A program made the position numbers and the translations under genes. From Setoptus koraiensis (taxonomy: Eukaryota > Animalia > Arthropoda), in contig CM106585.1 in the NCBI GenBank assembly GCA_048013815.1, forward strand, positions 11,966,001-12,030,000: DNA of 64,000 bases, in the 5' to 3' direction. This document shows, one piece after another, positions 3,467 through 51,580 of the stretch. The stretch's first letter is position 1. Every line of letters starts with the position of its first letter. The notes below the pieces were generated by a model that ran no database searches, was not told the origin of the DNA, and saw only the letters and a program-made list of their open reading frames with translations.

Positions 3467-6250
3467 CTAGATGACTTTATATCGGCCACCGCGACTCACA
3501 GCTGGCGCGTTGTTGATCTTGTTTATCTCTTCTTTTATCAAACGAACCACCTCACAACGGGCCTTGTCAACTACCAACTCCGAAGTGCCCTCAATAGCCA
3601 GATACAATTTTTTGTCTGTGGGCTCCTCGCCGGGCGGACAATATTTGCCACGAACCGTTATGCCGGCCTCGCTATATTCGCTGATTCGGGCCAGAGCGTC
3701 CTTAGATGTAACTCGCCAGCGAGCCTGTTGTGGGAAATCATTAATCTCCATCTCAATCTCGTGACGTTCGCTCAGCAACGAGGCAGCCGAACTGGATGCG
3801 CCCTCGTCCGCGTCGCCTGCTCCCTCAACGCCTGATGTGTCCTCCTGGTAATGAGGTCCAACTTGCGTGGCAAGCTGACCGACATTTGTTTGAGGGTTGT
3901 AGTTGAGTTTCAGGTGTAATTGATCCGCGATCATCTTGGCGTTCAGTACGGCGTTTGGCGCAGATGATACCGATGCATGTAGCGGCTGCTGATGACTAGA
4001 CGCACCACCTTGGATGGAGTCCATTTGAGCGATCTGATGCGATCCGGTCTTAGCGACGCCCTTATTAGACGCAATCAACTTACTAGCTAACATCTTGGCC
4101 AGCTCCAATTTTGGATTGTTGATAGCGGGCGTCTTTTCGCTCGTTTGTTGTTGATTGTTAACAGAGGTCTTGCCCTGTGCTCCGTCCAATTCGGAAATAT
4201 TATTCTTAGTATTTTTCATCTGACCACCGCTTGTTCCAGACTCTTTATTGTTACTTATAACAGTTCGTTTGGTAACATTATTGATTAGGCCCTCCAGAGC
4301 ATCGTCTGCTGCACCATCATTGTTAGCTCCGTCGTTACCTTCCTCTTCATCATCGGAATCTTGCAAGCCCAGAGATTTCTTTTGGTATTTTTTCTTTTCA
4401 TTAACTAATTGTGCCTCGGCTTCGTCAAATTTGAACCCTCTGCCGGAGAAACCCGAAGACGACTTCACCTTGTGACCCAAAGCTTCTTGTTCGGTCTTGA
4501 AATCGTTCCACAGTTTTCGCACATCTTCTGCCACTGGATTACCTGTCAATTCGAGTGCTTTAATTATGTCGCAAGCATATTGACCCTGGTCGGGTGTAAT
4601 GAATGTATAGGCGAAACCCTTCTTTCCGGCTCTACCAGTTCGACCGCATCTATGAACATAGTCCTCATAATGATTGGGACAATCATAATTTACAACACAG
4701 ATGCAATCTTCCACGTGCAAGCCACGAGCGGCCAATGATGTGGCCACCAAAACTTTCACTTCACCATTAGCCTTCTTGAAGCTAGAAATTGTGGATGACC
4801 TGTCGTCCTCATCTATGCCTCCATGTAAAACAAGACAAGGATATGACGCTTGCATGAGATCGCCTAGCAAAGAATCAGCTTTTTCTCTTTTGTCAACAAA
4901 TATAATGGCCCTACTTACAGCATCGACATGACGTCCTAGAATTTCCAATAGTTTGAGGAATTTATCCTCGTTCTTGACGATGTCCACAACTTGAGTGACA
5001 TCTCTACAAACAACTGATCGGCCTCCAACTTGTATCTCTATTGGTTTGGTCAGTATACGGCGTGCGTGCGCTTCCACTAATTTCGGAAATGTAGCTGAAA
5101 ACATTACTGTTTGTCTGTCTGATCTGATTAGGCCCGATGGTCCAATAATACGCTCTATCTGTTTTTCGAAACCCATATCGAACAGCCTATCGGCCTCGTC
5201 TAGCACAACAAAGGTACATCTCCTAAGATTGGTGACTCGCCCGCCGTTGACAGTGAGCATCTCTATCATTCTACCTGGAGTACATACAACCACCTCGGCA
5301 CCCAACTTCATTAAAGCAATTTGTTCGCTAATATTTGGTCCACCATAAATAGCGACAACCCTCAGTTTGGTGGCCTTTTTAAATTTGTTTGCGTCAACGC
5401 AAATCTGGGTAGCTAGTTCACGAGTGGGAGTTATAATGATACCAATAGGACCATCACCGGGCTCTAGTGGTGGCTGATTAAGAATGTGTCTAAACATTGG
5501 CAAGAGAAAAGACAACGTCTTGCCGCAACCTGTTTTTGCGATACCTATCACATCTTTGCCAGACATAATTGCGGGAATAGCCTGAGCTTGGATTGGCGTT
5601 GGCGTTGCAAATTGTAACTTGTCCGTGAGAACTCTCATTAGTTGTGAATTCAAACCGCAATGAGCCCATTTTTTGATTGGCTTTGGACATCCTTTGGACG
5701 GCATGACTTTTAATTCTAATTGATTTCTATAGTCTCTCACTTCTTGTTCAGTCATATCTGCTAATTCCTTCGCCTCGAGATAGAAATTTTTCTCAAATGG
5801 TTGAAAGGTGATGTCCTTTAGACTGATGCTCGTCAGTCTTTTTGCTGTTTTGTGCGAGGCAGAATTAATTGTTTCCATTGAGCTGGCCAGATCATCGGCT
5901 GCCGACAGGGCCTCTCTATCGTTGAGATCATCATCATCGTCATCCATAAGCTCGCCGCGTTTTCTTTTGATAGAATTCCATCCTTTCTTGTTCAGTCCAC
6001 TGGAGGATGGATTGGATTGTTGTTGATCCAAGGCAAGCTTGTCGCGGGCATTAGTTTCCTTAAGCTCCTCATTGATAGTTTTCATATACGCATCGAGAGG
6101 ATCCTCTTCTAAGTTGGTTATGGTGAGGGTAGTTTTTTTCGTTTCCCTTGCTTTTGTTGCCGCATTTTCGTCCTCGTCTAGACGACGTTTTGTAAGTTTC
6201 AAATTGGCGGTGGGGTCAGTTAAAAATAGCCTCTTCTTGTCGCTGAACAT
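3467..6250 (-). CDS. DDX46: DEAD-box RNA helicase DDX46/Prp5 (U2 snRNP, branch-site proofreading)
   Basis: 927 aa intronless ORF with the DPLDAYM motif, Q motif TPTPIQ, AKTGCGKT, PTRELA, DEAD, SAT, HRCGRTGRAG and the C-terminal KH-like EINDFPQQARWRVTSK segment typical of DDX46. Confidence 0.95.
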   Translation of the reverse strand: MFSDKKRLFLTDPTANLKLTKRRLDEDENAATKARETKKTTLTITNLEEDPLDAYMKTINEELKETNARDKLALDQQQSNPSSSGLNKKGWNSIKRKRGELMDDDDDDLNDREALSAADDLASSMETINSASHKTAKRLTSISLKDITFQPFEKNFYLEAKELADMTEQEVRDYRNQLELKVMPSKGCPKPIKKWAHCGLNSQLMRVLTDKLQFATPTPIQAQAIPAIMSGKDVIGIAKTGCGKTLSFLLPMFRHILNQPPLEPGDGPIGIIITPTRELATQICVDANKFKKATKLRVVAIYGGPNISEQIALMKLGAEVVVCTPGRMIEMLTVNGGRVTNLRRCTFVVLDEADRLFDMGFEKQIERIIGPSGLIRSDRQTVMFSATFPKLVEAHARRILTKPIEIQVGGRSVVCRDVTQVVDIVKNEDKFLKLLEILGRHVDAVSRAIIFVDKREKADSLLGDLMQASYPCLVLHGGIDEDDRSSTISSFKKANGEVKVLVATSLAARGLHVEDCICVVNYDCPNHYEDYVHRCGRTGRAGKKGFAYTFITPDQGQYACDIIKALELTGNPVAEDVRKLWNDFKTEQEALGHKVKSSSGFSGRGFKFDEAEAQLVNEKKKYQKKSLGLQDSDDEEEGNDGANNDGAADDALEGLINNVTKRTVISNNKESGTSGGQMKNTKNNISELDGAQGKTSVNNQQQTSEKTPAINNPKLELAKMLASKLIASNKGVAKTGSHQIAQMDSIQGGASSHQQPLHASVSSAPNAVLNAKMIADQLHLKLNYNPQTNVGQLATQVGPHYQEDTSGVEGAGDADEGASSSAASLLSERHEIEMEINDFPQQARWRVTSKDALARISEYSEAGITVRGKYCPPGEEPTDKKLYLAIEGTSELVVDKARCEVVRLIKEEINKINNAPAVSRGGRYKVI

Positions 6251-24351: not shown

Positions 24352-27126
24352 TCAACGCGCTGCTATGTTACAATGAAGAAAGATTAACTTCTCATCAACT
24401 GGGGGCCGATGATGTAACTTCTTTCTTCTCTCAATCGATGTTACACTAGCCGGCATACACAGCACCGATCTAGCAATGTGAGCCAATGTGGGATACCTTT
24501 TGGATGCTTCTTGCCACCAACTTAACAACATCTTTTCATTGCAAGAATTGGATTTATCTGAAAGATATCTGTTCAGCTCGTCCTGCTCAAATTCACTTAA
24601 TGCCTCCCACTCCGCATATTGTGAGCTAGCTGATATATTAGCTTTATATTCCTCAGATTGTTCAACATGGCGTGCATAGATTTCCATCAATCTCCTAACC
24701 TCTGCTTGTATCTCGTGCCTGTCTTTCTCACAAAACATCTTTAAATGTCTAAAATTAGGCCAGAAAAATACCGCGAGCTTATGCCACATGTGTAATTTAA
24801 TAACGTTGTCTAGCTCGGTTAGCAGGCTTAGCTTCTGCTCCATCATGTCAGGGTCATCGGCTGGTTCGGTGAGGAATTTCTTAAGCTTAAAATACTGAAG
24901 AGCAACTTGATTTATGGATGGTGAATGTTCAAAGCTTGATCTCATCAACTGAGATGCCTCCTTGAATGGTGTGAGTAGGTCTTTAATAGTAGTCATTGTC
25001 TGCATCATAGAATCCATTGAAAAATTACCGGGTATGAACTTGTCTACGTTGTCCATGACAGTCTTGATAAGGTCAAATTTATACATCCAATCAGCAGATG
25101 AGTTATCAGGTAAAAGCTTCAACTCGCAACAAATGTGTTTACAATTTTGGATTAACTGATCATAACGCCCGTCACTGAAGATGGCGACATCCACACAAGT
25201 ATCTAATAGATGAGATGCAGATGACAAGTGAACTTTAACTCCGCTCAACTGTCCAGCATTAGATATGTAGGAAAATTTGTTGATCAAAGTGTCTTCAAGC
25301 AACCCATAATCTTTAAGAGTAGTAGATATAAATTGAAGGAAATCCGTTATTCTTGATGAACCTCTAAGCACTCTATCTTGGAGTTTCCAATTGCGATCAA
25401 TATAACAGAGCGACATAATGCAGAGATCTTCTTTGAAATCTGAAACAATTGTACCTCCAAGATTATGTTCTATACAATAGTTGATCTCCTTTTGTATAGA
25501 GTTTTTTTCTTCCTCATATTTACCATCAGTCTGTTGTTGCAAGCTCTGTAAATTGAGGACGATGGGTGCTGAAATTTTAGATTGTAGTGTAGCAGATTTG
25601 AGTAGCTGCAATGCCATATTCCTGAATGCATCAGAGCAAATGGATTCTAGATTTACAAGTTCCGAATAACAAAAATTGATGACCGCTGACTTATAATCAA
25701 TCTTGGAAGCAGGCCGTAGGAGGCTATTGTTTTTTGACATGACTTTGATATTGTTGAATATCCTTTCGCCACCATACGCAAATTTTCCATCGCTGCCATC
25801 GCTGAAATGGCCTGTCTTAGGTGAATAATAACGACTTTTTGGTTCGGCTTTTAAAGAGGTTGTACCTTCGATAGACGAAGTTGAGGCGTCAGGGTTATAT
25901 TGGTTGCCCTTGAGCAGAAGTGATTTATTTCCGTCGAACTTGGGGCAGCAAACCTGATGAGTTCTGAGAGTTTTAGGCATAGCTTTGCGATCGCTAGCGC
26001 GAACGATGGCGCTACACAATGTACACCTAACCCATCCAAGTATTATATTAGTAGTAGGATCAACTATTTCTTGAAAATTCAACCATATATCTGACGCAGA
26101 ACGAATGTTTGGCTTATGACGGAATATGAGGTCGCCATTCTTCGGTTGTGTACCAATAGCAGCGAGTAGATCGTTTTTCGATGGACGCTTACATTCGTGT
26201 TTCTCAATGGCAACCAAATTGTATGGTACAAAATGAAAACATGACTTGCACATACAGTAGCTAACAAATTGCGTGGTTACGATATCTCTAACTTCGAAGT
26301 ATGGTTCTAATGCTCTTTCTGGTATTGTCCCATATTCATCTATTGTTAAATGTTCCTGCTTTATTCTTTTATTTGGGGTAAATGATTGATTAAATGAGCG
26401 ATCGTCAGTAGAGTCATCATTTTCCATTTTCATTGAATCGTCGTCCATGCTAGAATTGGCAACAGCCATTTGAACTCTAAGCTCGTGTCGTTTAGCTGCG
26501 TCCTTAACAGAATTGGGGAATAGTTCACCAAAACAACGATGCCTCCTCATGTGCGAAGTGCCAGTAGTTTGGCCGTGATATCTAGTGATGAACAAACAGT
26601 TGTGACATCTTATCATGCCAGTGAATTCATTAGTGTCTTTAGCAATAATCTCCTCAAATAGTTTCCATACATCGGATTGTCTGGCACTGGCGGCCCTGTC
26701 TGGGTTTATCTCTCTAAATTTAGTATAACACTGGCCATTGTCTAGCATGGCCCTAATTTCTGTAACACTAGAAGGATTTTTGGGTGGATTACCTCTACTT
26801 CTGACCGGCAATTTGCCCGTCGTCTGTCTGGTGGTGGTGGTGTTTGTGTTGGCGGTGGCGGCAGCATTGTTGTTGGTGCCCGCAACGGTAACACCGTCCT
26901 CGTCACCAATACCATCGTTATCTGGCGTTGGTGCGCCATTATCGGTCAATCTGATGGGTATATTTGCTGGTCCGTGCGAGCCCATGTGACCAGGGCTATT
27001 GTTCTGGGCATTGGCTGAGGTATTGTGATCATAGAAGGAATTTGTTATGTTGGCGCCTTCAGCTGAGGTATTGTGTTCATAGAAGGAATTTGTTATGTTG
27101 GCGCCTTCCGCCAACGAATCGTCCAT
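24352..27126 (-). CDS. hAT-transposase-derived protein (ZBED-like), 2-3 BED fingers plus hAT C-terminal dimerisation domain, probably domesticated
   Basis: hobo/Hermes-type BED fingers (SDVWKLF...CHNC...GTSHMRRHRC; SDIWLNF...CTLC...LRTHQVCC; one degenerate C-x2-C...H-x-C between them). C-terminal LLSWWQ...YPTLAHIARSVLCMPASVTSIER. Uninterrupted 924 aa ORF, no TIR pair found. Confidence 0.85.
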   Translation of the reverse strand: MDDSLAEGANITNSFYEHNTSAEGANITNSFYDHNTSANAQNNSPGHMGSHGPANIPIRLTDNGAPTPDNDGIGDEDGVTVAGTNNNAAATANTNTTTTRQTTGKLPVRSRGNPPKNPSSVTEIRAMLDNGQCYTKFREINPDRAASARQSDVWKLFEEIIAKDTNEFTGMIRCHNCLFITRYHGQTTGTSHMRRHRCFGELFPNSVKDAAKRHELRVQMAVANSSMDDDSMKMENDDSTDDRSFNQSFTPNKRIKQEHLTIDEYGTIPERALEPYFEVRDIVTTQFVSYCMCKSCFHFVPYNLVAIEKHECKRPSKNDLLAAIGTQPKNGDLIFRHKPNIRSASDIWLNFQEIVDPTTNIILGWVRCTLCSAIVRASDRKAMPKTLRTHQVCCPKFDGNKSLLLKGNQYNPDASTSSIEGTTSLKAEPKSRYYSPKTGHFSDGSDGKFAYGGERIFNNIKVMSKNNSLLRPASKIDYKSAVINFCYSELVNLESICSDAFRNMALQLLKSATLQSKISAPIVLNLQSLQQQTDGKYEEEKNSIQKEINYCIEHNLGGTIVSDFKEDLCIMSLCYIDRNWKLQDRVLRGSSRITDFLQFISTTLKDYGLLEDTLINKFSYISNAGQLSGVKVHLSSASHLLDTCVDVAIFSDGRYDQLIQNCKHICCELKLLPDNSSADWMYKFDLIKTVMDNVDKFIPGNFSMDSMMQTMTTIKDLLTPFKEASQLMRSSFEHSPSINQVALQYFKLKKFLTEPADDPDMMEQKLSLLTELDNVIKLHMWHKLAVFFWPNFRHLKMFCEKDRHEIQAEVRRLMEIYARHVEQSEEYKANISASSQYAEWEALSEFEQDELNRYLSDKSNSCNEKMLLSWWQEASKRYPTLAHIARSVLCMPASVTSIERRKKLHHRPPVDEKLIFLHCNIAAR
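27014..27108. repeat. 48-bp tandem duplication in the 5' coding region of the hAT-derived gene (AEGANITNSFY[E/D]HNTS x2)
   Basis: Two copies starting at 27014 and 27062 differ at one base. Confidence 0.92.
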
Positions 27127-47704: not shown

Positions 47705-48398
47705 TGTATAATATAGTAGTGACAGAGGTATGGCAATATGGTGTCACAGAGAATTTGTGATATTCCCAGATCTAACACACAGGGATAGCGACAGTAAATA
47801 TAGTCAATATTATAATTATTACAACAGCAATTATACTTATTAAGATTATTAGACTGGAGGGAGGTTTACATCGGTCATAGAGATCTCCGTAGAGAATGGG
47901 TACAGCGGACTTGTTCTGGCTTGTTTCCCCTCATGCATGCTGAAAACGCGTTCAGTTTTCCCCTAATGCTCAGGCAATCATATTCAGACACACTATTCAA
48001 CGGTGGAGCGTGCACAAATAGCCAAACAGACAAAAAACGCGCATCAACTGAGCATGCGCCTGACGGATGCCGGCAGTTTATCGTAGGCAGTATAAGAATG
48101 TGTTGTTGTTGCTATCTGCAGATAAACCATGCAGCAAGTTCATGATCATTGTGACCATGCCGCCAAGTTGCCAAGTGCGCGTTTAGAGCGAACTCTCTCG
48201 ACGCATATCCGCAATTTAGACCTTCAACTGCCTATACTGTTGGCTTTATATTCACCACGTGCCTGCATCACTATTATCATATTATTATTAGACATAGATT
48301 GTAAACGTTAATCTAATTCACATCAAACGTTTTTCTATCTTTCAATTTAGACTACTTCGCCTTCGGCCATATCAGTGAGGACAACAAACAGAGACGTC

Positions 48399-50268
48399 AT
48401 GAAGTATATTCTGGTCACTGGAGGTATACAGAGTGGCATAGGAAAGGGAGTCATAGCTAGCTCCATTGGAGCCCTGCTCAAGGCTTGCAATTTGCGTGTG
48501 ACTGCAATAAAAATAGACCCTTACATCAACATCGACGCTGGTACATTCTCGCCCTATGAACACGGTGAAGTGTTTGTCCTCGATGATGGATGTGAAGTTG
48601 ATTTGGATCTAGGTAACTACGAACGCTTTCTAGAGACGCGATTACATGGAAAGAACAATATTACAACTGGCAAGATATTTCAAACTGTGTTTGATCGTGT
48701 CGAGCAAGGCCAATACTCTGAAGAGTTTATCAAAATAGACAATCACGTGATAGACTGCATACAAGAATGGATAAGCAGTGTGGCACGAGTGCCAAGCGTC
48801 AATGATTTGGCGCATATATCTACAAACAACACTAACGACGCTGACACCGTCAATGGCGACGACGTTAGTCCAGACGTTTGTATTATTGAACTGGGCGGTA
48901 CAGCTGGTGATATAGAAGGAGTCATATTTATAGAGGCTCTCAATAGATTCAGGCACATGGTTCTATCAGAAAACTTTTGTTGCATACATGTCACGCTCGT
49001 CGCAAACATAAATGGCACAGGTACACTAGAGACAGATCCAACAAAAGGTGGAGTGAAAAAATTGCACAATTTTGGACTACGGCCAGATCTAATCGTCTGC
49101 AGATCCGAAGCGGCCTTGCCAGAATCCATTCTTGATACAATATCCCGAGATTGCGACATTGAACAAAACAAAGTTTTCAATTTACCTGACTTCAGAACAA
49201 TTTACAAAGTTCCAATTGAATTGGAGCGGCAAGGTGTACTCAAAGCTTTGGCCGATTGCCTGAAATTGCCGTTAGAGCCCACAGACAAAATCCAGAGATG
49301 GAATACTCTTAGCACCATTGCAACGACTGCTGCCGAAGAAGTTATTATAGGATTGGTGGGAAAATACACAGCCTTCCGTGATAGTTATACATCTGTCATC
49401 AAAGCAGTAGAGCATGCTTGTTACTATGTAGGATTAAAACCATGTATTCGTTATATTGACTCAAGCTCACTAATTCAACCTGATGATTCAGATCCCGAGA
49501 AATTTGAGAAGATCCAAGAATATGATCAGGCTTGGGATGATCTCAGAAGCTCTCACGGGCTTCTCGTTCCAGGTGCATTCGGTAAGTTGATAGCACTGAT
49601 GATAGTCAAGTAAAACGAGGAGTTTGAAATCGATCTAATTCTTTTATTCTCATGTCGTGATTTGAATTATAGGCTATCGTGGTGTTGAGGGAATAATAGT
49701 CGCCATCGAATGGGCACGTACAAATAAAGTTCCTTTCTTGGGTATTTGTCTTGGATTTCAGGCGGCCACAATCGAATACGCGCGTAACGTAATGGGTATC
49801 AACGAAGCAAACTCAGCTGAATTTGCCACTGAGGCAAATTTGCCCCCAAGTTTCATTCCAATTGTGATAGAGATGCTCGAATATCAGGATCCTATGAAAA
49901 AACTGGGAGGGACTATGAGACTAGGTAGCAGAGCAACAAAATTCGTTACTTCCGACAGTATACTGAGAAAATTGTACGGCGATGTTGATGCAGTATACGA
50001 ACGTCATAGACACAGGTATGAAATCAATCCGGAGTATGTTGATCGGTTGGAGGCTTCTGGGCTCAGATTTGTCGGTAAAAATGATGACGAGATAAGAATG
50101 GAAATACTGGAACTGGACGAGTCGATTCATCCGTTTTACGTGGCTGTCCAGTATCACCCAGAGTACTTGACCCGGCCGTTCAAACCATCACCACCTTACC
50201 TTGGATTAATCAAAGCCTCTAGAACGAGATCTCAAGACTTTGTTGTTTGCTGTGAAAAAGTTGCGTAA
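48399..50268 (+). CDS. CTPS: CTP synthase family protein, divergent synthetase domain; join(48399..49581,49673..50268), 592 aa
   Basis: MKYILVTGG..SGIGKG, KIDPYINIDAGTFSPYEHGEVFV, DLDLGNYERF, GICLG, ERHRHRYE, QYHPE. The 91-nt GT-AG intron joins in frame. Confidence 0.92.
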
Positions 50269-50465
50269 TCTATGTGATAACAGTAGTTAACAATTGAGTG
50301 TATTAAAAGATGGATTTTATTCTTCTATATGTACGAACAAAAGCTAATCAACATAAGACATCAAACACTTTTAATTGACTTCTGTCGCTCATACAAACTC
50401 TTATATCCACCAATACCATCATATTTTGACCAGCGGACTACCATTGTCGACAGTTTGGGTGGAGC

Positions 50466-51580
50466 TTACTGCTTTCCCTTCCACGACCATTCAGGTGTTT
50501 CTTTCTTGGGTTCTTTGGTGTCCGTCATTTGATCCTTTCGGACGGATTTCAATGAGATAGTGAATCCGACCTCTTTTCGGGCGTTTAATAACATGCGCTC
50601 GATCTTCGCTTCGTATTTTGGTATTTTCTTGAGTGGTGGACGTATACTATTCGATTGCGAAGTATTAATTGTACACAAAATGATGAAACAATGCAAAAGT
50701 TACTCTACTAGCTCGATCATGCTTCAAAATGAATATACCTCACGTGTTACGTCTACTTACAATTTTCCTCTCATATCGTTGACTTTAGTGGCCATCTCAG
50801 TGATCTATTTTCGTTTGGTTGAAATGGAAATGTTGAAATTGATATAGATGAATTTATTCATTTGGTTATTCGCAACAGAAAAAGATTACTGTTTGATTGT
50901 TTGTTACTCACCTCGTAATCTTTACGATTGACTTGGTACTCGAGATCGTATTTTTCATTCTCTAACCGTTCAATTTTTTCATGATACTGTTGGGCTAGGG
51001 CAAGTAATTGCTCTGTAGGCGATTTCAAGTTGATTGTAAGTAAAGTTCGTTAAAGCAAGATGTATGGAATTCAAATGATTAATAACGTTTACGCTCCAGA
51101 ATACTCTACTCACCGTTGGATAAACCTTCCAGAGGCTTCCTGGTTCCTGTTCGTTGAGCGATCACTTTTCGTCTTTCGTTTGCCTTGGCCTCTTGTTGGC
51201 GTTTGAGCTCTTCGGCGGCCTTTCTTCTTAAAAGTAAACGTAACTTTTTCTTTCTTTCAGGTGTCATAAAACCTTTCTTCTTCTTGCTGGCAGAAGCGGC
51301 CTCCAGACGGGCCCTCACTTCGGCCTTCTTGCGCTCGCGATCTTCGCGTTTGCGTTTTTCTTCCTGTTATTGTGGTCATCGTGTTGATGATGATATTTGT
51401 ATCATGCGAGTAGTTGGTTTTGTTATGTTTGTTTTTGTTGTTTCATTTCAATGAATATTCAATATTTATTTGTTAATTAGATTCGTTACAATTGTCGCAA
51501 TGAGATTTAACTTACTTCGGTTGCAATTTAACTGCACCTGTGTGTTTGTTTATACTCACCTCACTTATAAAATCATTCAT
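50466..51580 (-). CDS. TnI: Troponin I (protostome type); complement(join(50466..50646,50761..50804,50912..51012,51114..51363,51560..51580)), 198 aa
   Basis: [46 protein letters not shown]-terminus. Four GT-AG introns join in frame; the first exon (MNDFISE) is less certain. Confidence 0.9.

What the first reader, a model, noticed from the sequence alone, without database searches (positions are those of the whole stretch)
48399..50268. CTP synthase with its UTP/CTP triphosphate-binding site rewritten: pseudo-enzyme or new activity
The ATP P-loop Lys (SGIGKG), DLDLG, IELGG, GDIE and the glutaminase Cys-His-Glu triad (GICLG, QYHPE) are intact. However, the near-invariant GE(Q/L)KTKPTQ is GTLETDPTK (49020-49046; two Lys changed to acidic residues). 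The Lys of KI(S/A)xFC is Thr (DTISRDC, 49137). KERxGxYLGxTVQxxPH has become RVEQGQYSEEFIKIDNH, and GGFG is GAFG. In E. coli PyrG the K187/K189/Q192/K223 region contacts the triphosphate of substrate UTP and feedback CTP (numbering from memory). Charge reversal concentrated there, in an otherwise intact spliced gene, points to loss of UTP binding or feedback, a changed substrate, or a structural role in cytoophidium filaments (inference).
Basis: partly seen in the sequence, partly recalled or inferred. Interest (0 to 1): 0.75.

Follow-up and report, generated by a model that had tools for sequence, protein, structure and literature searches.

The report
Mite CTP synthase with rebuilt nucleotide pocket
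A deep-branching gall-mite lineage keeps, expresses and conserves a full-length CTP synthase whose catalytic machinery is intact but whose pocket for the phosphate tail of UTP and for the feedback inhibitor CTP has been replaced, so it probably no longer behaves as a textbook CTP synthase.

Summary
A two-exon gene (48399-49581, 49673-50268, + strand, 592 aa) encodes a complete CTP-synthase-family protein. [quoted passage not shown]

Of 201 columns near-invariant in 110 canonical animal CTPS, 25 are changed. None of 57 falls in residues 1-100, and 20 of 56 fall in residues 101-254. The changes hit the triphosphate loop (Ec K187E, K189D, Q192K), K223T, F227D, R158N, the L4 coupling loop (Ec 102-118) and the L11 hinge (Gly352Ala).

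A syntenic ortholog in another species (SRR33593474) shares 23 of the 25 changes. dN/dS is 0.08 at dS 0.7, so this is not a pseudogene. RNA-like contigs cover its exons only.

A DDX46 control shows that the two species form a deep sister lineage to all other sampled eriophyoids. Paralogy is therefore not shown, and the gene may be the lineage's only intact CTPS. I could not test for a canonical copy in this genome.

My best reading is an active amidoligase with changed substrate-tail recognition or CTP feedback. A dead pseudoenzyme is the main rival. A filament role is not supported. The scan holds one other CTPS note on this genome (s1-364678), which I did not examine.

The parts
48399..49581 (+). 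Exon 1: whole synthase (ammonia-ligase) domain, the linker and the start of the GAT domain (residues 1-394 plus the first base of codon 395).
   Evidence: Pfam CTP_synth_N at 7e-98. 49-55% identity to human, Drosophila and eriophyoid CTPS. AF2 model has pLDDT 80 and its top PDB matches are CTPS.
49582..49672 (+). Single intron: GT..AG, 91 nt, phase 1, inside the codon after PGAF.
   Evidence: The frame is restored across it. The ortholog L001 has an intron at the same position, 95 nt. A DNA contig spans it unspliced (X6 record 7). RNA-like X7 contigs leave it uncovered, and one starts at the exon-2 edge.
49673..50268 (+). Exon 2: rest of the glutamine amidotransferase domain, with Cys (GICLG 49741-49755) and His/Glu (QYHPE 50149-50163), the GTP contacts GGTMRLG and ERHRHRYE, a conserved tail DFVVCCEK, and the stop.
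   Evidence: Pfam GATase at 1.4e-25. Alignment. Coordinates.
48699..48752 (+). Rewritten L4 loop region (residues 101-118, equal to Ec 102-118). 9 of 12 near-invariant columns are replaced: Drosophila E101V, R102E, L107S, G108E, T110F, V111I, Q112K, P115N, T118I.
   Evidence: The region couples glutamine hydrolysis to CTP synthesis and its Leu contacts GTP (PMC9138612; PMC8325340). Ec Q114-I116 line the CTP pocket (PMC10182726).
48795..48848 (+). 18-aa lineage-specific insert (residues 133-150) in a surface loop.
   Evidence: Absent from all canonical sequences. Conserved in L001 (local omega 0.02). Low pLDDT, so probably flexible.
48921..48953 (+). Helix equal to Ec 152-161 of the CTP pocket, with M156V, P157I, R163N (Ec R158) and Q164R (Drosophila numbering).
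   Evidence: The helix is named as part of the CTP pocket in PMC10182726.
49020..49046 (+). Former triphosphate loop: GTLETDPTK in place of G/S-x-E-x-KTKPTQ (Drosophila E190T, K192E, K194D, Q197K).
   Evidence: K192/T193/K194 bind the UTP triphosphate (PMC8325340). Identical in X7 and X11 contigs.
49122..49154 (+). Helix equal to Ec 218-228: ESILDTISRDC, with Ec K223 to T (49137-49139) and Ec F227 to D.
   Evidence: K223 and F227 contact CTP (PMC10182726).
49575..49577 (+). Ala393 in PGAFG, at the position of Ec Gly352, the hinge of lid L11.
   Evidence: G352P abolishes glutamine-dependent activity in E. coli (PMC9138612).
46775..47704 (-). Upstream neighbour: NXF-like gene, part of the conserved local gene order.
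   Evidence: 90% identical to the NXF_NTF2/TAP_C gene of L001.
50413..51318 (-). Downstream neighbour on the minus strand (troponin-like), with a spliced intron at 50647-50760.
   Evidence: tblastn to the L001 troponin ORF at 51109-51267. X7 contig joint 50646>50761 with CT..AC ends.

Best explanation
The gene encodes a transcribed, selectively maintained enzyme of the CTP-synthase family. It is found in a deep-branching eriophyoid (gall-mite) lineage: this species and the one sequenced in SRR33593474.

Shown:
- The parts that bind ATP are unchanged: Gly13, Gly15, Lys16, Arg216, Asp312.
- The parts that phosphorylate uracil O4 are unchanged: Lys16, Lys38, Asp70, Glu145.
- The uracil and ribose contacts (Asp40, Asp152, Glu154), the ammonia gate (His55) and the GTP contacts on the GAT side (Phe50, Lys306, Tyr307, Phe373, Arg376, Leu444, Arg479, Arg481) are unchanged.
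- The glutamine-hydrolysing Cys-His-Glu triad is unchanged.
- The pocket at the tetramer interface that clamps the triphosphate of UTP and holds the feedback inhibitor CTP has been replaced by a new set of residues with net charge reversal. So have the L4 loop that couples glutaminase to synthase and the hinge Gly of lid L11.
- That new set is itself conserved between the two species.

Inferred:
- The protein is still a glutamine- and ATP-dependent uracil-4 aminating enzyme.
- It no longer recognises the substrate's 5' tail in the classical way and is no longer feedback-inhibited by CTP in the classical way.
- Either it binds UTP through metal ions and the newly gained Lys112/Lys216/Arg250, or it acts on a uridine compound with a different 5' group.

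Whether it is the lineage's only CTPS or works beside a canonical copy is undecided.
For: - Family and fold: Pfam CTP_synth_N plus GATase; NCBIfam CTP synthase NF003792 at 371 bits against a 308 cut-off on exon 1 alone; top PDB sequence and fold matches are all CTPS.
- Constraint: dN/dS 0.075-0.08 at dS 0.70-0.76 against the syntenic ortholog L001. The first 100 residues have omega 0.006. The intron position is shared.
- Pattern of change: 25 of 201 near-invariant columns are changed, confined to residues 101-254 plus 5 others, and none of 57 in residues 1-100. 23 of the 25 new residues are identical in the ortholog.
- Ligand residues: the documented ligand residues of Drosophila CTPS (PMC8325340) are all kept except L107, Q112, K192 and K194. 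Ec K223, F227, R158 and Q114-I116 of the CTP pocket are also changed (PMC10182726).
- Transcription: the X7 run holds a spliced contig of the neighbouring gene. Its contigs on this gene cover exons only, and one starts at the exon-2 edge. Runs X11 and X10, guessed to be RNA, hold exon-1 pieces.
- No overall acceleration: root-to-tip length is 0.75 against 0.53-0.95 for canonical eriophyoid CTPS. A dying or free-running copy would be expected to show acceleration.
Against: - No activity was measured.
- Two acidic residues now sit where two lysines clamp a tetra-anionic triphosphate. With K223T and F227D as well, the change could abolish nucleotide binding at this site altogether.
- The L4 loop and Gly352 changes resemble E. 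coli mutants that uncouple or abolish glutamine-dependent synthesis.
- Omega of 0.08 is about four times that of canonical pairs (0.02 or less).
- A pseudoenzyme that must keep its fold, its dimer interface and its ATP or glutamine binding could preserve many of the same residues.
- Splicing of this intron is not directly shown by a bridging RNA contig.
- The gene lies outside the conserved NTF2-RNA_pol_L-Fer2-Gcd10p-CTPS-RRM_1 block that holds CTPS in every other eriophyoid looked up. That fits a duplicated copy.
Confidence: 0.45

Rival explanations
1. It is a catalytically inactive pseudoenzyme with respect to CTP synthesis. It is a duplicated CTPS that lost nucleotide-substrate binding. It is kept as a regulatory partner of a canonical CTPS encoded elsewhere in the genome (for example in mixed tetramers), or as a stand-alone glutaminase or ATP-binding protein.
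For: - Charge reversal at both triphosphate lysines, plus K223T, F227D and R158N.
- All rewritten elements sit at the tetramer interface (PMC10182726).
- The L4 and Gly352 changes mimic uncoupling mutants.
- The gene is at a different locus from the conserved eriophyoid CTPS block.
- Another CTPS-derived piece is reported on the same chromosome (s1-364678). If real, it shows that the family has duplicated here.
- Omega is about four times the canonical value.
Against: - No canonical CTPS has been shown for this species or for SRR33593474.
- None of the 13 canonical-bearing samples I looked up is that run.
- A short-protein search found no further eriophyoid CTPS piece.
- Every catalytic, uracil, ribose, gate and triad residue is retained, with omega 0.006 over the first 100 residues. 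That is more than a scaffold role needs.
- There is no overall rate acceleration.
- The DDX46 control shows that the tree position is simply the species position, so paralogy is not demonstrated.
- A full-text search returned no paper that describes a CTPS pseudoenzyme.
Confidence: 0.3
2. It is an ordinary working CTP synthase (UTP to CTP, inhibited by CTP). The lineage-specific substitutions are compensated by the neighbouring gains Q112K, Q197K and N231R and by Mg2+ bridging.
For: - The gain of Lys or Arg at three positions next to the lost lysines looks like a charge swap.
- All chemistry residues are intact.
- The protein may be the only full-length CTPS of the lineage.
- The summed TIGR00337 score of the two exon pieces is about 597 bits against a 462.75 cut-off.
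Against: - The replaced residues are invariant in 110 canonical sequences, from mites to vertebrates.
- Net charge in the pocket moves by several units towards negative.
- F227, R158 and Q114-I116, which shape the cytosine pocket, are also replaced, so normal CTP inhibition is unlikely.
- The synthase part scores 95-130 bits lower against the PyrG model than the same part of canonical eriophyoid CTPS.
Confidence: 0.15
3. It is a decaying pseudogene, or an assembly or annotation artefact.
For: None beyond the unusual motifs.
Against: - The reading frame is intact in two species, with the same intron.
- dN/dS is 0.08 at dS 0.7.
- 23 of the 25 derived residues are conserved.
- The sequence is reproduced in contigs of several independent runs, and RNA-like contigs lie on the exons.
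Confidence: 0.02

Closest known systems
Metazoan CTP synthase (human CTPS1/CTPS2, Drosophila CTPS; EC 6.3.4.2)
   Same: Same two-domain architecture and fold, with 47-49% identity in structural alignment. The ATP site, catalytic Lys16/Lys38/Asp70/Glu145, uracil and ribose contacts, His55 gate, GAT-side GTP contacts and Cys-His-Glu triad are all identical.
   Different: - The triphosphate loop KTKPTQ is replaced by ETDPTK.
- Ec K223T, F227D, R158N and Q114-I116 to K-I-D.
- The L4 loop is rewritten, including the GTP-contacting Leu107 to Ser.
- The lid-L11 hinge Gly is Ala.
- There is an 18-aa insert.
- The filament His355 is absent.
Canonical eriophyoid CTPS (P0002-P0024 and related; loci L002-L005, L086-L094)
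   Same: They share clade-specific characters, such as Cys in DDGCEVDLDL and the MLEYxDP segment. Together they form one clade with 100/100 support.
   Different: The canonical genes are intronless and sit in a conserved Gcd10p-CTPS-RRM_1 block. They keep every invariant CTPS motif. The window gene has one intron, lies between an NXF-like gene and a troponin gene, and carries the rewritten pocket.
E. coli CTPS site-directed and drug-resistance variants (D107A, L109A/F, G352P; CTP-resistance changes around residues 116, 146-158, 229)
   Same: Natural substitutions here fall in the same elements that these variants define: the L4 loop, the L11 hinge and the CTP pocket helices (PMC9138612; PMC10182726). 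The list of CTP-resistance positions is from my own knowledge.
   Different: Those are single laboratory or selected changes in an enzyme that keeps K187/K189. Here about 20 invariant positions changed together and were then fixed under purifying selection.

Membership tests
CTP synthase homology family (Pfam CTP_synth_N + class I GATase; NCBIfam PyrG) | N-terminal CTP_synth_N domain followed by a class I glutamine amidotransferase domain | tested here: met
   PF06418 at 7.2e-98 on exon 1 and PF00117 at 1.4e-25 on exon 2.
CTP synthase homology family (Pfam CTP_synth_N + class I GATase; NCBIfam PyrG) | Score above the curated equivalog cut-off | tested here: inconclusive
   Only the exon pieces could be submitted. 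NF003792 gives 371.3 bits on exon 1 against a cut-off of 308, which is met. TIGR00337 gives 382.7 and 214.4 bits on the two pieces against 462.75 for a whole protein. The same part of canonical eriophyoid CTPS scores 477-514 bits.
CTP synthase homology family (Pfam CTP_synth_N + class I GATase; NCBIfam PyrG) | CTPS fold | tested here: met
   The AF2 model has pLDDT 80. The 50 best Foldseek PDB matches listed are all CTPS, with TM about 0.8.
CTP synthase as an enzyme (EC 6.3.4.2: UTP + ATP + Gln to CTP, CTP-inhibited, GTP-activated) | ATP P-loop and phosphoryl-transfer residues (Drosophila Lys16, Lys38, Asp70, Glu145) | tested here: met
   All are present in the alignments. Their roles are from PMC8325340.
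CTP synthase as an enzyme (EC 6.3.4.2: UTP + ATP + Gln to CTP, CTP-inhibited, GTP-activated) | Glutaminase Cys-His-Glu triad and oxyanion region | tested here: met
   GICLG and YHPE are present. The oxyanion and lid hinge reads PGAFG instead of PGGFG.
CTP synthase as an enzyme (EC 6.3.4.2: UTP + ATP + Gln to CTP, CTP-inhibited, GTP-activated) | UTP/CTP triphosphate clamp (Ec K187-T188-K189, Q192, K223) | tested here: not met
   The residues here are E211, T212, D213, K216 and T247. The canonical residues are invariant in 110 canonical sequences.
CTP synthase as an enzyme (EC 6.3.4.2: UTP + ATP + Gln to CTP, CTP-inhibited, GTP-activated) | CTP feedback pocket (Ec Q114-I116, R158, F227) | tested here: not met
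   The residues here are K-I-D, N and D. The pocket residues are from PMC10182726.
CTP synthase as an enzyme (EC 6.3.4.2: UTP + ATP + Gln to CTP, CTP-inhibited, GTP-activated) | L4 coupling loop (Ec Asp107, Leu109) and lid-L11 Gly352 | tested here: not met
   The residues here are Gln105 (Glu in L001), Ser107 and Ala393. Their roles are from PMC9138612.
CTP synthase as an enzyme (EC 6.3.4.2: UTP + ATP + Gln to CTP, CTP-inhibited, GTP-activated) | Measured CTP synthesis, CTP inhibition and GTP activation | not testable with these tools
   Needs purified protein or complementation.
Filament-forming (cytoophidium) eukaryotic CTPS | Interface helix with His355 (Drosophila/human numbering; role from my own knowledge, with His359 in S. 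pombe per PMC10779087) | tested here: not met
   Asp in the window protein and Thr in L001. The stretch carries the only indels between the two orthologs. Canonical eriophyoid CTPS have the segment deleted.

The most novel reading that the evidence does not exclude
This deep gall-mite lineage has no canonical CTP synthase at all. Its only intact CTPS has lost the lysine clamp for the UTP triphosphate and the CTP feedback pocket. One possibility is that the enzyme aminates uracil on a different substrate (a uridine compound with another 5' group) or by a re-invented, metal-bridged binding mode. The other is that the mite lives on cytidine salvaged from plant cells while the protein serves a new reaction. 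The eroded half CTPS noted elsewhere on the chromosome (s1-364678) would then be the relic of the ancestral gene.
Probability: 0.3. Interest if true: 0.8.

Novelty: new variant of a known kind. Interest (0 to 1): 0.6.

Why it matters
CTP synthase is one of the most conserved enzymes of nucleotide metabolism and a drug target. Its UTP/CTP pocket is invariant from bacteria to humans.

A natural, selectively maintained version has all its chemistry residues but a charge-reversed nucleotide-tail pocket and a rewritten coupling loop. It could serve as a test case for three questions: how UTP is held, how CTP feedback works, and how glutaminase and synthase are coupled.

If it is the lineage's only CTPS, it would mean one of two things. 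Either there is a new way of binding UTP or a new substrate, or an animal has lost de novo CTP synthesis. That would bear on metabolic streamlining in the smallest arthropod genomes. A full-text search returned no paper that describes a CTPS pseudoenzyme or a variant of this kind.

Tried and rejected
- **Pseudogene or artefact.** Rejected by dN/dS 0.08, the shared intron, independent contigs and RNA-like contigs.
- **Fast-evolving recent paralogue misplaced by long-branch attraction.** Not supported. Root-to-tip length is within the canonical range. DDX46 from the same two species (P0122 is from SRR33593474) is also sister to or outside all 42 other eriophyoid sequences.
- **Canonical CTPS in the sister species.** All 12 contig look-ups are used. 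Nine of them located canonical eriophyoid CTPS genes, in 13 samples, none of them SRR33593474. This is inconclusive, because other canonical clusters were not looked up and intron-split pieces would score too low to be listed.
- **Exact look-up of the window's CTPS and 10 other window proteins.** None is in the protein collection, so the species itself cannot be searched there.
- **Metagenome scan with exon 1.** It returned only hits of 49% identity or less, with no eriophyoid contig.
- **Laying this species' reads on a canonical CTPS of another mite.** Abandoned, because canonical orthologs are only 66-72% identical in DNA, below the tool's 80% floor.
- **Search restricted to short proteins, for a half-CTPS relative.** Only P0001 is eriophyoid-like.
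- **Ancestral-intron test.** The Leptotrombidium CTPS has an intron about 9 codons upstream of this one, not at the same site, so the test gives no verdict.
- **Paralog of 80% or more DNA identity in the DNA run X6.** None seen.
- **Species identity.** Two pieces and about 48 Mb by window count fit Setoptus koraiensis (47 Mb, two chromosomes; PMC11920263) better than the 34.5-Mb unidentified mite (PMC11879100). I could not verify this.
Full report
**Anatomy.** The region holds one gene on the + strand. Exon 1 is 48399-49581, a 91-nt GT..AG intron is 49582-49672, and exon 2 is 49673-50268. The spliced product is 592 aa. Exon 1 matches Pfam CTP_synth_N (7e-98) and exon 2 matches class I GATase (1.4e-25). 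The best solved relatives are human CTPS1/2 and Drosophila CTPS, at E about 1e-110. An AlphaFold model of the exon-1 part (pLDDT 80) finds only CTPS structures.

- I aligned the protein with 26 canonical eriophyoid CTPS and 84 other metazoan CTPS. 201 columns are conserved at 92% or more in both groups, and the window protein differs at 25 of them.
- The changes are sharply clustered: 0 of 57 conserved columns in residues 1-100, 9 of 12 in 101-118, 11 of 40 in 161-254 and 5 of 88 in the rest. Fisher p is 8e-9.
- In Drosophila numbering the changes include E101V, R102E, L107S, G108E, T110F, Q112K, P115N, M156V, P157I, R163N, Q164R, E190T, K192E, K194D, Q197K, K228T, G372A and K381I. F232 (Ec F227) is also changed, to Asp.

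**What the changed residues do in known CTPS.**
- K192/T193/K194 bind the UTP triphosphate directly, and Q112 binds it through water (PMC8325340).
- UTP and the feedback inhibitor CTP share this triphosphate pocket at the A-B-A' tetramer interface. The CTP pocket is built from helices Ec 115-130, 152-161 and 218-228, with Q114-I116, R158, K223 and F227 (PMC10182726).
- Residues Ec 102-118 (the L4 loop region) couple glutamine hydrolysis to synthesis. Its Leu (Ec 109, Drosophila 107) contacts GTP from the neighbouring protomer. Gly352 is the hinge of lid L11, and G352P abolishes glutamine-dependent activity (PMC9138612; PMC8325340).
- So two tetramer-dependent elements have been replaced: the UTP-tail/CTP pocket, and the coupling loop together with the lid hinge.

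**What is kept.** The documented ATP, catalytic, uracil, ribose, gate and GAT-side GTP residues are unchanged. These are Ser12, Gly13, Gly15, Lys16, Lys38, Asp40, Phe50, His55, Asp70, Glu145, Thr149, Asp152, Glu154, Arg216, Lys306, Tyr307, Asp312, Phe373, Arg376, Leu444, Arg479 and Arg481. The Cys-His-Glu triad is also unchanged. Two adenine-base contacts differ: His244 is Pro here, as in all canonical eriophyoid CTPS, and Leu246 is Phe.

**It is a living gene.**
- The protein search found one close relative, P0001, at 89% identity. Its contig L001 (run SRR33593474) has the same gene order: a 200-aa ORF, DNase II, an NXF-like gene, CTPS in two exons, then troponin. It also has the same intron position.
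- The two coding sequences differ by dS 0.70-0.76 but dN 0.057, giving omega 0.075-0.08. Omega is 0.006 over the first 100 codons, and 0.02-0.10 in every other segment, including the 18-aa insert.
- 23 of the 25 derived residues are identical in both species. By my rough estimate, that is far more than neutral drift at this dS would leave.
- Canonical eriophyoid pairs have saturated dS and omega of 0.02 or less. The new protein is therefore somewhat less constrained than a canonical CTPS, but still strongly constrained.

**Sequence and expression support.**
- 14 public runs from 8 studies hold the stretch or part of it, and six of them hold at least half of its sampled words.
- DNA contigs of X6 reproduce the stretch, including the unspliced intron.
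- Run X7 is of unrecorded kind but contains a spliced contig of the neighbouring minus-strand gene (joint 50646>50761, CT..AC). On this gene its contigs lie only on the exons. None lies on the intron, and one starts at the exon-2 edge with three unaligned letters.
- Runs X11 and X10, guessed to be RNA, hold exon-1 pieces. One of them covers the altered triphosphate loop without a difference.
- Transcription is therefore likely. A contig bridging this intron was not listed, so the splice itself rests on sequence logic and conservation.

**Origin: paralogue or ortholog?**
- All other eriophoid-type CTPS in the collection keep the canonical motifs.
- The nine whose loci I fetched are intronless. 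Most sit in a conserved block, NTF2-RNA_pol_L-Fer2-Gcd10p-CTPS-RRM_1 (searches are short contigs). None of those neighbours is in this window.
- In an ML tree the window protein and L001 are sister to all 26 canonical eriophyoid sequences, inside a 100/100 eriophyoid clade. At first I took this to indicate an old or fast paralogue.
- As a control I treated the window's DDX46/PRP5 gene in the same way. It is 92% identical to P0122, which comes from the same run SRR33593474. It is only 53-58% identical to 42 other eriophyoid sequences, which form their own clade.
- The two species are therefore a deep sister lineage of all other sampled eriophyoids, and the CTPS tree simply mirrors the species tree.
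- The CTPS root-to-tip length (0.75) also lies inside the canonical range (0.53-0.95). There is no general acceleration, only substitutions at places that are otherwise never touched.
- Paralogy is thus not demonstrated. The gene may be the lineage's ortholog at a rearranged locus.
- I could not test whether a canonical CTPS coexists. The species is absent from the protein collection. No canonical sequence came from SRR33593474 among those looked up. The metagenome and short-protein searches gave nothing.
I could not read it.
- My estimate is roughly even odds between a coexisting canonical copy and this being the only intact CTPS.

**How it most likely works.** All residues needed to bind ATP, phosphorylate uracil O4, hold uracil and ribose, deliver ammonia and hydrolyse glutamine are under the strongest constraint in the protein. 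I therefore think it still performs ATP- and glutamine-dependent amination of a uracil ring (inference). The pocket for the substrate's 5' tail and for CTP has lost three lysines, one arginine and the stacking Phe. It has gained two acidic residues in the loop and more nearby, along with new Lys112, Lys216 and Arg250.

The likeliest consequences are loss of classical CTP feedback together with either metal- or new-lysine-mediated UTP binding, or a switch to a uridine compound with a less anionic 5' group.

The main rival is a pseudoenzyme that no longer binds a nucleotide there and acts with a canonical CTPS or as a glutaminase. An ordinary, fully compensated CTPS is less likely. The filament idea is not supported, because the interface His is Asp or Thr in a variable, indel-bearing stretch.

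**Comparison and novelty.** By homology and fold it belongs to the CTPS family. By the defining substrate and regulatory signatures of the enzyme it fails three tested features: the triphosphate clamp, the CTP pocket, and the L4/L11 elements. I therefore do not file it as a proven CTP synthase. A full-text search for CTPS pseudoenzymes returned one unrelated paper. I rate it a new variant of a known kind. It would be of clear interest to CTPS enzymologists, and of higher interest if the lineage proves to lack a canonical copy.

Noticed in passing
window 47900-48015: The stretch just upstream of the gene has much higher summed contig depth in X6 (226 against about 14), with small indels among the contigs. 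It is probably a dispersed repeat or a low-complexity element.
   Followed up: no
window 50647-50760 (minus strand): A 114-nt intron of the downstream troponin-like gene is confirmed by a spliced contig in run X7. That run's kind is unrecorded, but this shows it contains RNA.
   Followed up: partly
window 24352-27126 (minus strand): A 924-aa ORF carries a hAT-family dimerisation domain. It may be an intact or domesticated hAT transposase in a very compact genome.
   Followed up: no
window 50236-50265: The C-terminal tail DFVVCCEK is conserved between the two species. It is absent from canonical eriophyoid CTPS, whose tails are short and variable. The paired cysteines might be a lipidation or metal site.
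   Followed up: no
L002-L005, L086-L094 (canonical eriophyoid CTPS): Canonical eriophyoid CTPS lack the segment that carries the filament-interface His355 of fly and human CTPS. Cytoophidium-type filaments may therefore be absent or differently built across Eriophyoidea.
   Followed up: partly
L092 (Leptotrombidium deliense NCKV01009891.1) about 2063-2110: The deposited gene model P0114 drops about 10 residues (G-V-L-V-P-G-G-F-G-S) at an intron boundary. tblastn recovers them in another frame segment, so this is probably a splice-site mis-annotation.
   Followed up: partly
L091, L094 (P0010, P0018): Two canonical eriophyoid CTPS carry mild variants of invariant motifs (KTKPLQ, KISKSC). This shows some tolerance in the pocket among eriophyoids, short of losing the lysines.
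   Followed up: no
window 3470-6250 (minus strand): DDX46/PRP5 of this species is only 53-58% identical to that of other eriophyoids, about as far as it is from spider mites and oribatids. The lineage is very deep or very fast-evolving, which matters for every 'divergent gene' call in this genome.
   Followed up: yes
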